64,000 nucleotides of DNA. Source: Ostrea edulis. Its lineage: Eukaryota. Location: positions 71,362,001 to 71,426,000 of the forward strand of contig NC_079168.1 in assembly GCF_947568905.1 (NCBI RefSeq), in the 5' to 3' direction. The position numbers and the translations under genes are program-made. The notes under the pieces were generated by a model, which was not told the origin of the DNA, did not search any database, and worked only from the letters and a program-made list of their open reading frames with translations. Below are positions 499 through 32,856 of the stretch, piece by piece (within the stretch, counting starts at the first letter, position 1; every line of letters starts with the position of its first letter).

Positions 499-3400
499 CT
501 TTTCGTAGGCTGAGGAAATGTATTCTCTCTACTGCTTTCTGGCGATCACCTTTGTCTTCTAGGTCGGTCTTATCGAATTCATCCAGAGCTTTCTGCAAAG
601 CTTCAAGGTCCTTGGAGCGGGAACATTCTTGTAACATCTTTCTGACTTTCTTCTCTAGAGCATTCTATAGCAATACTAGCTAATTAGATGGGGTATTTGT
701 TTATAAAAGACTATTACCAGACAACTATTCTCATCGAAATGCCACTGGATGTACATGTACTTACCTCATATGGCTTCCTCTTTTTGTTCATGTTCTCTGA
801 GGTCAGAAGGTAGTTGCACGCGTTCTTGTACGAATCACCAGATTCTTTGTCCTTAGTGTTAATCTGTAGGACGTACTCGCCTTGTTGAGGTAAATTCACA
901 TTGATGTCCAGCTCCTGACCTTTCATCTTATGGTTCACGTGTTTGTTCAGCGTTTCTTCTTCCACAGTATTATGTACCAGAATAGTTTGAATTAACACAT
1001 TTCTTTGAACGTGGAATTTGATATTGAAATTTTTTGTACTTTTCATGCTAATGAAGCCAGTTTTGTGCGATTGTGCTAGCAGTCCTGATTCTTCAGTCAC
1101 AGCATTAGGACCAAATCCTGACTCTGGATGACATGGAAATGGCTTCACATTGCTCACAGCCTCGTTGCAGTCAAGTCTGAATTCGCATAAAAGTGAGCGA
1201 CCACCAAAGATCGTCATCTTGTATACTCCTTCACTCGGAAACCGAATATGAAATCGCACAGAAAGTCCTTCATTGAAAACTGCAACGTACCTCTCCAACT
1301 GTATCTCAGAAGGCAGGGTAGTCTTTGACTGTCCATGGTTAAAGTACAATTTGTATGTGTGAACACAATCTTCCTTGTTCGGCTTCTTGATCTCTATATC
1401 GCATACTCCACCAGCAGACGTATAAAGGCATTTTGCCGGCGTTGTGATTCTATAGCGATTTTTGAAAAAGCCTTCTTTACAATATGAAATATCTATAAAG
1501 TCTTGTTTGGTAAATGGTCGTAAAAGAAGTTGCCATTTATAATCATAAGGAAAACAGCAGTATATGAACTCTTCTGGTTCAGTGAAGAAGAAATAGTCGT
1601 TTATACGACTGATTGTTCGTCCTGACGACTTATCTTCTTTCTCTCTGGCACCTTTACCTAAATTCATTATAACAAAACATTTATTAAAGATTTATTTCAT
1701 TTTTCTAAAATAATTAATGAAAAACATGAATAAATGAACAGTGATTAATCTCTTAAATTCTAGAAGAGCAAGGTAAACACCGACCCCTGGAAACACCAGA
1801 GATGGGGTCAGGTACCTCGGAGAAGCAACCTCTCCCTGTTGGCCAGTCACACCAGCCATAGGCCTGCTATTTTGATCAGCCAAATAGAGTAATCCATAGT
1901 CAATATAGATATGTAAAGAACGGTCTAACAATTGGTGCACAACATGTAAGGACATATAGTTTAGAAATTTATTTATTAGTATTGTCGGAGAATTACCTCT
2001 CACAACAAAGAATATCATATACTCCAATGAAACTAACATCCTCATACATTCCAAAAAATCAGTTATTCCTAATATTTACCTTTAATACTGTATCCTGCAA
2101 GTCTTTTCCATGTATTGAATTGGCCTACACTCTACACAATTCATTCAAAATCTATTTTCAGAAATGACATTGGTAGAGTGCGAATTTACAATATACAACA
2201 TACATAGGGGATGCTTACTCCTCCTAGGCACCTGATCTCACCTCTGGTGTATCCAGAGATCCGTGTTTGCCCAACTTTCTGTTTTGTATTGCTTGTAGGA
2301 GTTATGAGATTGATATGTAAATATGATAAAAACCCACTGTTGTTTCTTCAGTATTACATTTGATGGACTCTCATTTTACCTTGGGTTTCCACAAGAGTCC
2401 ATGTGCCAGTGGAGTGGCCAACAACTGCTGAGAAAGCCCACAGAGGAAACACGAAGTGCCATCCTCCGGACACATACACTGCTGTCCAAGAGTTGTTCAG
2501 ACTATCGATATCTTGGTCCCCCACCTCGTATGCCACACTTTTCCCTAGTCCTCGTATAAGTACACATGGGATATGAGCCGCCCTAGGGATTTAAGGCTAT
2601 GGTTTTGGAATTCAAGTAATAGTGCCGAAAATTTACAAACATTTCCAGACTTAGATACTGAAGTGATGTAAGAAGCCCGACATTTGAGACTCACCTACAG
2701 AGACTTACAAACAGAAAATTGTAAGAGAACTGTCTTTGTAAGACTTTTTGTACAATGATTTGAGGCGATGTGACATCTTCTGTGTTGTTATTGCCGTCGT
2801 TCTTTTTGCTCTTTGGGATGTTTCCTACTCTTCCTTGTAAACCAATCCAGGTGAAAATAGTGCGTACTTTCTGTACATCATTTAATCCGTGTGTCAAAGC
2901 GCGTGCAAGGTCACCCAGAGACTGGTAGTCTTCGACACTAATCTAAACAATAAAAAATCTCATATCACGGCTGTCTAAATAAAGTATGTCAGGAATACAA
3001 ATAAATCCTACTCTTTACTTTACCTCTTCATTGAAATCAATCGATATCCCCGTGCAATAATTCAGGTCAACGGAAACAGTTGTCATCTCAATATCAACAT
3101 TTTCTTTCTAGCTTGAGCAGTATAAATTTATAACCGTGTATAAACTATTTGTATTTGTGAAATACTGATACCCGCGTATGGTAGAGAGGTAATTATGGTA
3201 CCCAAAGAAAGGTCTTGTCACTAGGAATACACATATTCAAAAGTTACGAACAAAGTTATTTTTTTAAAATTAGGTCAAACGTCTCTGATGTGTTCATACC
3301 CACTGTTGTGCCAATTTTTACATACTGATTTTGACTACGGATTACTTCGTTACCTGACCAAGATATAGGGCTCATGGTGGATGTAACCGGTCTACAAGAG

Positions 3401-4653
3401 ACACTTCATTTCACAGGCACTTGTTTTATATATGGGTCACCCCCTCCTTACTAATATCACAAGGTACCTAAATAGATTTCAGACACCTTTTGCTTCAAGT
3501 CTCATTTTACGACTAGTTCACCATTTATCCTCACCTTTGTGATATAAGTCATTATCCTTGCTGGTATAAAGTTTTCAGCACCTTGCACGAAGCCCCATGG
3601 CTGTAAACTACCTGTTTAGTTATTGATTCTTACCATTTCACATTTTCAGACAATCCATCTACTACAATAACTTGCAGTTTGAGATCTACGGATTAACTTT
3701 TTTTATGGCGATAAAACATATTGTGTGTGAAAAATAGATGGTAATTATTCTATGGAATAATATGATATGATAGGTCTTGTTAGGAGGGATGCACATAAGA
3801 AAGCCATATCACTATCCATTCAAAAGTTGCGGCCAAGGTCAGAGTTTTCGTGGATAAACAGACAGACAGACGGTGATACCAAATCTATATGACTCCGAAT
3901 GTCCGATTAGGTGGTGCAAAAAAAGACAATAGATGTTTTCCGTCTTATTTACACCAAAAACAACATTCATGTGCTGCATGTTGATTAATTTCATTCATGT
4001 CACTTAATATATATTTCAGGTTTCTTTTATCTAAGAAATCAAAGACCCAGTCCAAGTATTATCAAAAGTACATGTATCATTCAATTGTTCTAGTACGTAT
4101 ACTGTTGCAGGACTGTATACTAAAATTCTCATTTCAGCCGAGGTCATAATTTCAAAGTTCCAACATTACCTGTGTCGCCCTTGCATCCGCAGCACTTTTA
4201 TCTCGGTCTGTGAAGATGTGTTCCTTTTTGTTTGGACTGGGTTTTGGTGGAGGGTACCCCCCTAAAACATCCTCTAAGCCCTCCTGTAGAACGGAAAGTC
4301 AACCTAAGATCAATTACTGTGGTTTCATAACTATTCATTCAACATTAATTTTTGTTCTTTCCATAAACGAACAAGACCATAAAATCAAATCATTTTTAAA
4401 GCACATATTTTAATTTAGAGGGAAAAAAGAGCTGTCCAAAATTTCACGGATCAATGGAGCTACATGTATACTCTTTAGCAAACCAGACACTTTGACTAAG
4501 GAAATCACAGAGACTTCGTTACCATCAAGCACTGAAACATACTCGTATTGAGTATTTTACCGGGTCATTCTCGGGTTCTCTTAGGTAATCCTCTTCCTTT
4601 CCTTCAGGTTTAGTAGCTTCCACACCAACTGACTTTGATCCCCCACAACCCAT
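499..4653 (-). CDS. KY (kyphoscoliosis peptidase)/hillarin-like protein, paralog 1; 3' part continues beyond the window start
   Basis: Exons 4653-4561 (MGCGGSKS...), 4283-4170 (GGYPPPKP), 2942-2695 (KVRTIFTWI...SLCR), 2582-2380 (W-AVY..GGW.FVFPLW), 1657-765 (INDYFFFTEPEEFIY..FP) and 664-499. All boundaries are GT-AG with consistent phases. Exons of 203 and 166 nt match the paralogs. Confidence 0.88.
2194..2320 (+). mobile_element. Solo PLE 3' module in a paralog 1 intron (others at 1741-1880, 3290-3420, 5886-5975, 40283-40440)
   Basis: ggggatgcttactcctcctaggcacctgatc.cacctctggt...ggagttatgagattgat, shared with the 63600-63765 copy. Confidence 0.8.
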
Positions 4654-32000: not shown

Positions 32001-32856
32001 GTTTCATAAACCCTCGAGGTGTCTTGACGAGATCCTCTACAGTATATCCGTCCAAGTTCTTGTATTTGGTGGTAGTGATTGGCTGAACACAGAGCCACAT
32101 GAATAGTGCACGTACCTTCTGCATGTCTGTCCGGAATGGCAGAACGAGGTAGTCGAGAAGCTGCTGGAAGGACAAGTCAATCTTAGAAGGAACCTGTAAT
32201 AAAGGGAAAAAAACATACACTCCACAACTATATGGGTACATACACATAAACATCACTGTACTCTTTTTCAATGAATAAGATGACAGATGCGATTCATGTG
32301 GATGAATATTGTGAATGAAGTTGAAAGGTGTGATTTCAAGCAGAGGATTATAGTCCAGCCATAGAACAGTTTGGCGTTTTCCTGGAACTAAGTGGACACA
32401 TTTTGATTGGCTTGCAAAAGAGGTTGGGATCCATTGTATTAATTTTACCAAATTCGCGGAGCAATGCTGATGACAATATAGGTCTTGACGATGGGGATAA
32501 TTATGTCCCTGATACCTTTCTAACGTGCTGGTGTACATCTTTATACTTCCAGTGTTCATAAATATCATCCTTTTTCAGAGAGTTCTGTTTGGGTACGGGG
32601 TAATCCTCGTCTGACGGAAATTCGGGTACGTCTACCTATAATTCAAATTTAGTATATACGAACATTACATTAATTCAAAACTGTATATTTTCACAAGACG
32701 TCGGGTCAGTTCCTTTTTTTATTTTAATTTCAGTGCACGTGATCATTTCAAACAAGGTAATATAATACTTGCCTCTTCATCGTCAGGTTCCCGCTGATCA
32801 CCGGACTTCTGAGATTTGGATTGCCGAGATCCTTGTGCCGAGGAATTGCTACCCAT
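29007..32856 (-). CDS. KY/hillarin-like protein, paralog 3 (~752 aa)
   Basis: Exons 32856-32773 (MGSNSS..., GC donor), 32635-32516, 32193-31949, 31812-30705, 30149-29984, 29762-29482, 29398-29213 and 29075-29007. In phase, 2259 nt. The 166/281/186-nt exons equal those of paralog 2. Confidence 0.9.

What the first reader, a model, noticed from the sequence alone, without database searches (positions are those of the whole stretch)
499..32856. Triplicated cluster with the architecture acylated N-terminus, dead transglutaminase, MTBD-like tail: candidate membrane-microtubule linkers
Seen: paralog 1 starts MGCGGSK and paralog 3 starts MGSNSS. Established: MGxxxS is the N-myristoylation consensus, and Cys3 is often palmitoylated in such proteins; dual acylation targets several proteins to ciliary membranes. 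Paralog 2 seems to lack the motif (tentative start MTFEF). Inference: with an MTBD-like tail these could tether membranes to microtubules, for example in cilia, the cytokinetic midbody or axons, with one soluble and two membrane-bound variants.
Basis: inference. Interest (0 to 1): 0.72.

Follow-up and report, generated by a model that had tools for sequence, protein, structure and literature searches.

The report
Motorless dynein tip on membrane-anchored scaffolds
Three neighbouring oyster genes encode inactive transglutaminase-like scaffold proteins that start with a lipid-anchor signal and end in a copy of the microtubule-gripping tip of the motor dynein without the motor, so they probably tie membranes to microtubules, and the same tip sits on many other membrane-anchored animal proteins.

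Summary
Three minus-strand KY/hillarin-like genes lie in tandem. I built spliced models. Paralog 3 is complete at 752 aa. Paralog 1 runs off the left end of the window. Paralog 2 lacks only its first exon.

- **N-termini:** paralogs 1 and 3 start MGCGGSK and MGSNSS, as their oyster orthologs do.
- **Dead enzyme:** all three have lost the Cys-His-Asp triad (QNF, KNF, RTH).
- **Tail:** a profile of mollusc tails hits only dynein heavy chains in the PDB (E 2.5e-9). A tail model of the Saccostrea ortholog superposes on dynein microtubule-binding domains (Z 13.5-15.3). The proteins end 10-40 residues after helix H6 (67 in paralog 2), so they have no return coiled coil and no motor.
- **Assembly gaps:** neither gap touches an identified exon. 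The second lies where paralog 2's first exon could be.

About 695 protein clusters (E<=1e-10) carry it, and none of the best 150 is dynein-sized. It sits C-terminal to acylation motifs, single-pass receptors or multipass membrane proteins, from sponges to tunicates. That supports a membrane-microtubule tether, but nothing is tested experimentally.

Paralog 2's start and "one soluble variant" remain open, because no RNA data were found. The scan noted the same architecture on another piece of this genome (s1-281873).

The parts
499..4653 (-). Paralog 1 (partial). Exons: 4653-4561, 4283-4170, 2942-2695, 2582-2380, 1657-765, 664-499. It starts MGCGGSK, and 572 codons are in the window. The MTBD exons lie beyond the left end of the window.
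   Evidence: tblastn with oyster orthologs (66-73% identity over the large exon). Splice junctions. Translation. Last exon ends in phase 1 at 499.
4561..4653 (-). Paralog 1 exon 1. Begins Met-Gly-Cys-Gly-Gly-Ser-Lys: a Gly2 myristoylation consensus with Cys3 as a candidate palmitoylation site.
   Evidence: The same start occurs in orthologs P0026, P0027, P0030 and P0034.
17253..23327 (-). Paralog 2 without its first exon. Exons: 23327-22987, 22827-22625, 20925-20021, 19859-19694, 18744-18464, 17782-17597, 17453-17253. 761 codons; stop at 17252-17250.
   Evidence: Five of six exonic polymorphisms seen in DNA runs are synonymous.
23926..23955 (-). Candidate first exon of paralog 2 (MTFEFIDQMK, donor AAG|GTAAGC, phase 0). 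Unverified. It has no Gly2.
   Evidence: Best-scoring phase-compatible ATG-plus-donor pair between 23340 and 28990. No RNA support.
17597..18744 (-). Paralog 2 MTBD-like module. Exon 18744-18464 carries the CC1-like helix and H1-H2. Exon 17782-17597 carries H3-H6.
   Evidence: Aligns to the tail family profile. That profile hits only dynein MTBDs in the PDB.
29010..32856 (-). Paralog 3, complete at 752 aa. Exons: 32856-32773, 32635-32516, 32193-31949, 31812-30705, 30149-29984, 29762-29482, 29398-29213, 29075-29010. Starts MGSNSS. Intron 1 is GC-AG.
   Evidence: Ortholog P0038 (Saccostrea cucullata) is 84% identical over 740 aligned columns. Junctions.
29213..29762 (-). Paralog 3 MTBD-like module (two exons).
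   Evidence: The AlphaFold model of the orthologous P0038 tail superposes on dynein MTBDs.
31500..32193 (-). Paralog 3 transglutaminase-like core, with the triad replaced by R-T-H. The equivalent regions are 2942-2380 in paralog 1 (Q-N-F) and 23327-22625 in paralog 2 (K-N-F).
   Evidence: Alignment to the triad-bearing newt KY-like protein P0014. Weak Pfam PF01841 hits.
765..1657 (-). Large exon carrying the two Ig-like_KY domains of paralog 1. The equivalents are 20925-20021 in paralog 2 and 31812-30705 in paralog 3.
   Evidence: Pfam PF23265, E 1e-34, 4.7e-47 and 2e-40.
26120..26319 (.). Assembly gap in the interval where paralog 2's first exon is expected. Not filled and not read.
   Evidence: DNA contigs of other runs reach into it, but their letters were not looked at.

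Best explanation
Shown: the window holds three paralogous genes of the KY/hillarin family, and each protein is built from four parts.
1. A short N-terminal exon. In paralogs 1 and 3 it carries a Gly2 N-myristoylation consensus. Paralog 1 also has Cys3, as in dually acylated SH4-type proteins.
2. A transglutaminase-like core that has lost all three catalytic residues, followed by two Ig-like_KY domains. This makes it a pseudoenzyme scaffold.
3. A helical linker that includes a 'LEDKGD' hairpin exon.
4. A C-terminal module homologous in sequence and fold to the microtubule-binding domain at the tip of the dynein stalk. It has no return coiled coil (CC2) and no AAA+ motor.

Inferred: the lipidated N-terminus sits in a membrane, the tail binds the microtubule lattice in the dynein manner, and the pseudoenzyme and Ig part recruits partners. 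The proteins would then act as static membrane- or cortex-to-microtubule tethers. With no CC1/CC2 registry switch, binding would not be nucleotide-gated. Paralog 2 may be a weaker or regulated variant: its start is unknown, its MTBD core has net charge -1, and it ends in a 67-residue acidic extension.
For: - Gene models and N-termini. MG starts are conserved in nearly all full-length mollusc homologs.
- Lost triad: in the window (QNF, KNF, RTH) and in every tail-bearing KY core among 107 examined. Only vertebrate and bacterial relatives keep C-H-D.
- Tail, sequence: a profile of 24 mollusc tails hits 30 PDB sequences, all of them dynein heavy chains. Best are yeast MTBD 6kjn (E 2.5e-9) and DNAH6 (E 5e-9). 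Pfam PF12777 scores 25.1 bits, above its cut-off of 24, on the tail of Pecten P0007.
- Tail, fold: the AlphaFold model of the P0038 tail has pLDDT 84. Foldseek's top hits are dynein MTBDs. VIA-align gives Z 15.3 to 3err, and Z 13.5 with rmsd 2.3 A over 114 residues to the human DNAH1 MTBD.
- Microtubule contacts: taken from yeast dynein (PMC7042235) and counted over 155 tail domains. E3122 is E in 153/155. R3124 is R/K/H in 137/155. A basic residue sits next to R3159 in 100/133. R/K is one position before R3201 in 78/135.
- Comparative architecture: the module is nearly always at the extreme C-terminus, ending a median of 15 residues before the protein's end. Of the 146 representatives examined, 41 have the myristoylation consensus (22 of these with Cys3-5) and 12 have a transmembrane segment upstream. 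These include VWA, CLCA+VWA and EGF ectodomain proteins of tunicates, amphioxus and a hemichordate, where the tail would be cytoplasmic.
- Minimal form: short proteins made only of an MGCG start plus the tail exist in gastropods and bivalves.
Against: - There is no experimental evidence for lipidation, microtubule binding or localisation.
- No RNA run was found, so the models rest on homology, frame and splice sites.
- Two of the six dynein salt-bridge residues are not kept: K3117 is mostly Q and R3152 is variable.
- In dynein, high affinity depends on the CC1/CC2 registry. Without CC2 the state of H1 is unknown.
- Pfam's dynein model does not reach significance on the window's own single exons.
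- Paralog 1's MTBD exons are outside the window. Their presence is inferred from six of seven orthologs in its clade.
- Paralog 3 has myristoylation only and few nearby basic residues, so its membrane affinity may be weak.
Confidence: 0.55

Rival explanations
1. The tail keeps the dynein MTBD fold but has been repurposed. It would bind another partner (soluble tubulin, septins, another acidic filament, or a protein of the cortex), and the proteins would be membrane-associated scaffolds unrelated to microtubule tethering.
For: K3117 and R3152 equivalents are not conserved. The net charge of the MTBD core is only +2 at the median and -1 in paralog 2. There is no CC2 to set a high-affinity registry. 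From my own knowledge, not tested here: KY-family relatives are linked to filamin or the Z-disc, and fly Hillarin to septins.
Against: The single acidic contact residue (E3122, partner of alpha-tubulin R402) is almost invariant at 153/155. The H1 and H3 basic positions are largely kept across phyla. That is hard to explain unless the tubulin-facing surface is under selection.
Confidence: 0.22
2. The proteins are specifically ciliary. The acylated N-terminus would sit in the ciliary membrane and the MTBD on axonemal doublets (membrane-doublet links in gill, larval or sperm cilia), rather than acting as general cortical tethers.
For: Dual acylation is a known ciliary targeting signal (established knowledge). 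Among full-length dyneins in the PDB, the profile's best matches are axonemal inner-arm heavy chains (DNAH6, E 5e-9). The closest superposition is to the DNAH1 MTBD (rmsd 2.3 A). The taxa seen are rich in motile cilia, and no nematode or arthropod appeared among the named hits.
Against: The yeast cytoplasmic dynein MTBD scores as well as the axonemal ones. The taxon pattern comes from a few dozen named hits, not a census. There are no expression or proteome data.
Confidence: 0.15
3. Annotation artefact or decay. The tail exons would belong to separate transcripts, or paralog 2 would be a pseudogene that lost its first exon.
For: No RNA evidence for this species. Paralog 2 sits on a long branch (0.7), has two weak acceptors and lacks a detectable MG exon.
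Against: All exons are open and in compatible phases, and intron positions and phases are shared by the three paralogs. RefSeq models of many molluscs join the KY core and tail in one protein. Five of six exonic polymorphisms in paralog 2 are synonymous.
Confidence: 0.06

Closest known systems
Dynein heavy chain microtubule-binding domain (Pfam PF12777 'MT'; structures 3err, 6kjn, 6rzb, 8i3j)
   Same: Same six-helix globular fold preceded by a CC1-like helix. Shared motifs include the P-P turn after H1, LLG-E after H2, W at the start of H3 and S-x-A-A-x-x-F/Y-x-W in H6. Profile E 2.5e-9; Z 13.5-15.3. Several tubulin-contact residues are kept.
   Different: No CC2, no antiparallel stalk and no AAA+ ring. 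The module is the extreme C-terminus of 300-1900 aa proteins. K3117 and R3152 equivalents are not kept. A three-residue insert (T-G-K) lies between H3 and H4 relative to yeast.
KY (kyphoscoliosis peptidase) / hillarin / LTD-1 family of transglutaminase-like proteins
   Same: Transglutaminase-like core followed by Ig-like_KY domains (PF23265, E down to 4.7e-47). NCBI names the orthologs hillarin-like, ltd-1-like or kyphoscoliosis peptidase.
   Different: The catalytic triad is lost, whereas the vertebrate KY-like proteins P0014 and P0044 keep C-H-D. There is an N-terminal acylation motif instead of a LIM domain. A C-terminal MTBD-like tail is present, and the vertebrate members seen here lack it.
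SH4-type dually acylated proteins (Src-family kinases such as Lck/Fyn, G-alpha i/o)
   Same: An MGC... start with a small residue at position 6 (MGCGGSK). Paralog 3's MGSNSS resembles the myristoylated-only c-Src start. This comparison is from my own knowledge and was not tested.
   Different: No kinase or G-protein domain. The lipid modification itself is unverified.
Known membrane-microtubule linkers (for example CLIMP-63, STIM1-EB1, spectraplakins)
   Same: The proposed job is the same: one end in or on a membrane, the other on microtubules.
   Different: These use unrelated microtubule-binding elements (basic regions, SxIP/EB binding, GAR domains). None uses a dynein-type MTBD. This comparison is from my own knowledge.

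Membership tests
KY/hillarin transglutaminase-like family | Ig-like_KY domains (Pfam PF23265) | tested here: met
   E 1e-34, 4.7e-47 and 2e-40 on the large exons of paralogs 1-3, two stretches each.
KY/hillarin transglutaminase-like family | Transglutaminase-like core (PF01841) | tested here: met
   Weak on the window's exons (E 0.02). E 6e-7 on ortholog-family member P0007. Aligns colinearly with newt KY-like P0014.
Active transglutaminase/KY peptidase | Catalytic Cys-His-Asp triad | tested here: not met
   Q-N-F, K-N-F and R-T-H in paralogs 1-3. Only three of 107 cores examined (newt, fish, bacterium) keep C-H-D.
Dynein MTBD (PF12777 region 100-210) | Sequence-profile similarity to dynein MTBDs | tested here: met
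   The tail profile A1 hits only dyneins in the PDB, best E 2.5e-9. PF12777 scores 25.1 bits against a cut-off of 24 on the P0007 tail. The window's single exons do not reach it alone.
Dynein MTBD (PF12777 region 100-210) | Six-helix MTBD fold | tested here: met
   Model of the P0038 tail (ortholog of paralog 3): Z 15.3 to 3err, Z 13.5 with rmsd 2.3 A over 114 aa to 8i3j, Z 11-12 to 6kio, 6rzb and 6l4p.
Dynein heavy chain | Antiparallel CC1/CC2 stalk and AAA+ motor ring | tested here: not met
   Among the 24 mollusc homologs the protein ends 7-43 residues after H6 (22 in paralog 3, 67 in paralog 2). Total length is about 750 aa with no AAA domain.
Dynein MTBD function (microtubule binding) | Conserved tubulin-contact residues and actual binding | tested here: inconclusive
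   E3122, R3124, a basic residue beside R3159 and R/K beside R3201 are largely kept. K3117 and R3152 are not. Binding is not testable with these tools.
N-myristoylated / dually acylated proteins | Met1-Gly2 with the consensus G-{EDRKHPFYW}-x-x-[STAGCN]-{P}; Cys3 for palmitoylation | tested here: met
   Paralog 1 (MGCGGSK) and paralog 3 (MGSNSSA) fit; only paralog 1 has Cys3. The motif occurs in 41 of 146 family representatives. Paralog 2 cannot be determined.
N-myristoylated / dually acylated proteins | Lipid actually attached | not testable with these tools
   Needs metabolic labelling or mass spectrometry.

The most novel reading that the evidence does not exclude
A metazoan-wide family of motorless dynein-tip modules, previously undescribed. 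At least about 700 protein clusters carry it, from sponges and corals to molluscs, brachiopods, nemerteans, hemichordates, amphioxus and tunicates. It would serve as the cytoplasmic microtubule-docking end of membrane-anchored proteins, whether lipid-anchored KY pseudoenzymes, minimal 'MGCG + tail' proteins, single-pass receptors with VWA/CLCA/EGF ectodomains, or multipass proteins. That would make it a new class of membrane-microtubule tether, derived from an ancient capture of the dynein stalk tip and apparently absent from vertebrates.
Probability: 0.4. Interest if true: 0.85.

Novelty: new variant of a known kind. Interest (0 to 1): 0.72.

Why it matters
As far as I know, and as far as my paper searches showed, the dynein MTBD has been described only as the tip of the dynein stalk. 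Its microtubule affinity there is set by the registry of a two-stranded coiled coil coupled to an ATPase.

A natural MTBD without CC2 or a motor, conserved across many animal phyla and repeatedly joined to membrane anchors, would have three consequences:
- It would define a new kind of microtubule-associated protein.
- It would offer a natural experiment on what the MTBD does when it is uncoupled from the stalk.
- It would give a first functional handle on invertebrate KY/hillarin pseudoenzymes.

It also explains odd automatic names in databases, such as a 356-aa abalone protein called 'cytoplasmic dynein 2 heavy chain 1-like'.

Tried and rejected
- **RNA support:** the search for RNA runs with paralog 2's large exon found none on record as RNA. 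The four best holders turned out to be DNA contigs, with even cover of introns and no intron-skipping joints. Splice junctions and paralog 2's start could therefore not be checked with reads.
- **MG-type first exon for paralog 2:** I scanned 23340-28990. The only two ATGGG starts are hydrophobic and implausible.
- **Pfam on single tail exons of the window:** no dynein hit at E<=0.1. Significance appears only with full tails or a family profile.
- **Single-sequence phmmer of the C. gigas tail against the PDB:** dynein is the top hit, but only at E 0.07.
- **Foldseek on the whole 235-residue tail model:** only E about 0.03, although probability is 1.0. The aligner-based second look was needed.
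- **Paper searches:** searches for hillarin plus dynein/MTBD and for 'MTBD-like' found nothing on a non-dynein MTBD. The library lacks most subscription journals, so this is weak evidence of absence.
- **Leech hillarin:** I looked for it among tail-bearing proteins with the last word search and it was not seen. This is not conclusive.
- **Separate-gene reading:** I considered and rejected the idea that the tail is a separate gene (see rivals).
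Full report
**Setting.** The window is AT-rich animal DNA (GC 0.29-0.45) with three N runs at 7842-7984, 26120-26319 and 53797-53931. The large open exons on the minus strand at 714-1667, 19958-21013 and 30699-31913 each carry two stretches of Pfam Ig-like_KY (PF23265; E 1e-34, 4.7e-47, 2e-40). The exons upstream give weak Transglut_core hits. The closest database proteins are bivalve 'hillarin-like', 'ltd-1-like' and 'kyphoscoliosis peptidase' proteins. In a gene tree, paralog 1 nests among Saccostrea and Crassostrea virginica sequences (support 100/99). 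The genome is therefore that of an ostreid oyster; I did not determine the species.

**Gene models.** I used tblastn with oyster orthologs, then a frame-aware search for splice sites scored against those orthologs, and checked the result by translation.
- Paralog 3 is complete: 8 exons, 752 aa, from the ATG at 32856 to the last codon at 29010. It is 84% identical to Saccostrea cucullata P0038 over 740 aligned columns. Its first intron is GC-AG with the typical GCAAGT donor.
- Paralog 1 has six exons in the window, 4653 to 499. The last is the first tail exon and ends in phase 1 at AAAG|GTACTG. The rest lies beyond the left end of the window.
- Paralog 2 has seven exons from the acceptor at 23327 to the last codon at 17253 (761 codons). 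It has no start codon, so one upstream exon is missing.
- Intron positions and phases are shared among the three genes.

**Assembly gaps.** Gap 7842-7984 is intergenic and lies next to Tc1/mariner-like ORFs. Gap 26120-26319 lies between paralog 2's first recognised exon and the end of paralog 3. No exon or reading frame that I use crosses a gap, so continuity across the gaps does not affect the models. The one exception is that paralog 2's first exon may be hidden in the second gap. Contigs of public DNA runs reach into that gap.

**N-termini.**
- Paralog 1 begins MGCGGSK and paralog 3 begins MGSNSS. Both fit the N-myristoyltransferase consensus. Paralog 1 also has Cys3, the usual palmitoylation site in SH4-type proteins (established knowledge).
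- The starts are not chance ATGs. Orthologs begin MGCGGSKST (P0030), MGCGGST (P0027, P0037) and MGSNSST (P0038). Nearly every full-length mollusc homolog, including the limpet Lottia, begins MGCG, MGSG, MGN or MGA.
- For paralog 2, the sequenced interval 23340-28990 holds no plausible MG start.
- No RNA run was found, and the four runs I laid were DNA. Paralog 2's N-terminus stays open.
- Paralog 2 does not look like a decaying copy. All exons are open, and five of six exonic polymorphisms seen in the DNA runs are synonymous.

**Dead transglutaminase.** A newt KY-like protein, P0014, keeps the catalytic Cys (GVCAGY), His (NHMWN) and Asp (LLDACW). Aligned to it, the window's proteins have Q-N-F, K-N-F and R-T-H at those three positions. 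Every tail-bearing core has lost the triad.

**The tail is a dynein-type MTBD.**
- *Sequence.* The mollusc tails align well, with invariant P, M, L-G-E, W, G, F and W. A profile of 24 tails searched against all PDB sequences returns 30 hits, every one a dynein heavy chain. The best are the yeast cytoplasmic MTBD 6kjn (E 2.5e-9), DNAH6 (E 5e-9) and the mouse MTBD 6rzb (E 6e-7). Pfam's dynein stalk model PF12777 matches the Pecten tail above its gathering score, on profile positions 100-210, which I take to be the MTBD part.
- *Fold.* The AlphaFold model of the P0038 tail has mean pLDDT 84. Its top Foldseek matches are dynein MTBDs and stalks. It superposes with Z 15.3 on 3err, and with Z 13.5 and rmsd 2.3 A over 114 residues on the human inner-arm dynein MTBD 8i3j.
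- *What differs.* Among the mollusc homologs the proteins stop 7-43 residues after helix H6; paralog 3 stops after 22 and paralog 2 after 67. There is no CC2, no antiparallel stalk and no AAA+ domain.

**Is the tubulin-facing surface kept?** The yeast MTBD-microtubule model names six salt-bridge residues: K3117, E3122 and R3124 on H1, R3152 and R3159 on H3, and R3201 on H6 (PMC7042235). I mapped these through the HMMER alignment and counted them over 155 tail domains.
- E3122 is Glu in 153/155.
- R3124 is R/K/H in 137/155.
- The residue next to R3159 is K/R in 100/133.
- R/K stands one position before R3201 in 78/135.
- K3117 is mostly Gln, and R3152 is variable.

Paralog 3 has K, E, M, E, R(K) and R-K at these places, and its core net charge is +5. 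Paralog 2 has Q, E, R, M, W(R) and H-A, a core charge of -1 and a 67-residue acidic extension (charge -9). The surface is therefore partly conserved. This fits retained tubulin binding but does not prove it.

**A much wider family.** The tail profile, searched against 1.84 billion representative proteins, finds 1992 proteins at E<=1e-3, 695 at E<=1e-10 and 134 at E<=1e-30. The best 150 are 95-1861 aa long, so none is a dynein. Canonical dyneins score about 40 bits against this profile, which would correspond to E near 1e-5 in that library. I infer from this that the 695 are non-dynein. The architectures found are:
- KY core plus tail, in molluscs, the brachiopod Lingula, and amphioxus (where the protein is named 'KY').
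- Short proteins made only of an MGCG-type start plus the tail, in Elysia, Lottia, Haliotis, Pinctada and Ostrea edulis. One abalone protein is named 'cytoplasmic dynein 2 heavy chain 1-like' at 356 aa.
- Type-I membrane proteins with a VWA, CLCA+VWA or EGF ectodomain, one transmembrane helix, then the tail, in Styela, Branchiostoma and Saccoglossus.
- Multipass membrane proteins plus tail, in Branchiostoma.
- EF-hand plus tail, in the sponge Sycon and the coral Porites.
- Others in Oscarella, Ciona, Clavelina and the nemertean Lineus, plus one marine protist transcript.

Of the 146 representatives I examined, 41 have the myristoylation consensus (22 of them with Cys at 3-5), 12 have a transmembrane segment upstream of the tail, 40 are fragments and 51 have other starts, some of them visibly truncated models. 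The module ends a median of 15 residues before the C-terminus. One constant C-terminal module joined to interchangeable membrane anchors is what a membrane-to-microtubule tether would look like.

**History of the cluster.** Paralog 1 belongs to a well-supported oyster clade. Paralog 2 is its long-branched sister (support 94/88). Paralog 3 with P0038 forms a separate deep lineage (100/100). The 'triplication' is therefore at least two duplications of different age. Saccostrea cucullata has orthologs of paralogs 1 and 3 on one contig, and Pecten maximus has several members on one chromosome. The scan has also noted four neighbouring genes of this kind on another piece of this genome (s1-281873). 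I did not examine that locus.

**Verdict.**
- *Shown:* the architecture of acylation motif, pseudo-transglutaminase, Ig-like domains and dynein-type MTBD without stalk or motor.
- *Inferred, with good comparative support:* membrane anchoring plus microtubule docking.
- *Unsupported:* that paralog 2 is soluble, and any particular cellular site.

I found no paper describing a dynein-type MTBD outside dynein. The library is incomplete, and automatic annotations already flag PF12777 on a few of these proteins. I rate it a new variant of known kinds, combining a known microtubule-binding fold with a known scaffold family in a new context, and of high interest.

Noticed in passing
window 6890-7733 (+): Two adjacent ORFs that look like a broken Tc1/mariner transposase, right next to the assembly gap 7842-7984. 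Judged by eye from the translations; not scanned.
   Followed up: no
window 21264-21779 (+): ORFs with a BED-zinc-finger / hAT-transposase look, inside the 1.7-kb intron of paralog 2 (22624-20926). Judged by eye only.
   Followed up: no
window 18050-18463: Long (TA)n and (GA)n microsatellites begin directly at the donor site of paralog 2's first MTBD exon (GAG|GTATATATAT...).
   Followed up: no
window 24200-24399, 25200-25800, 26000-26199, 27600-27799: High-copy repeats upstream of paralog 2. Summed contig depth in four DNA runs is hundreds to thousands of times that of the flanks.
   Followed up: partly
window 32773/32636: Paralog 3's first intron uses a GC-AG splice pair with the donor GAG|GCAAGT. 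The alternative GT donors fit the ortholog less well.
   Followed up: yes
P0036 (Lottia), P0138 (1744 aa, metagenome), P0053, P0119: The roughly 55-residue 'LEDKGD' helical hairpin that precedes the MTBD is itself a repeat unit. There are two copies in Lottia and up to 17 matched stretches in P0138.
   Followed up: no
PDB 7jtk chain C (res 435-598) and 9fqr chain Xl (res 1350-1496): A Chlamydomonas radial-spoke-1 chain and a bovine sperm axoneme chain match the MTBD model at Z 11.5 and 9.1. They may be other non-dynein MTBD-like folds, or just generic helical similarity. The chains' identities were not looked up.
   Followed up: no
P0237, P0241 (Ostrea edulis, Crassostrea virginica 'trichohyalin-like', ~570-590 aa), P0242 (Lineus 'apical junction molecule-like'): Tail-bearing proteins without a KY core and with misleading automatic names.
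   Followed up: no
window 33150-43347: Other first-reader notes on this window concern an intron-rich lysA-like gene and a Penelope-like palindrome just right of paralog 3. I did not examine them.
   Followed up: no
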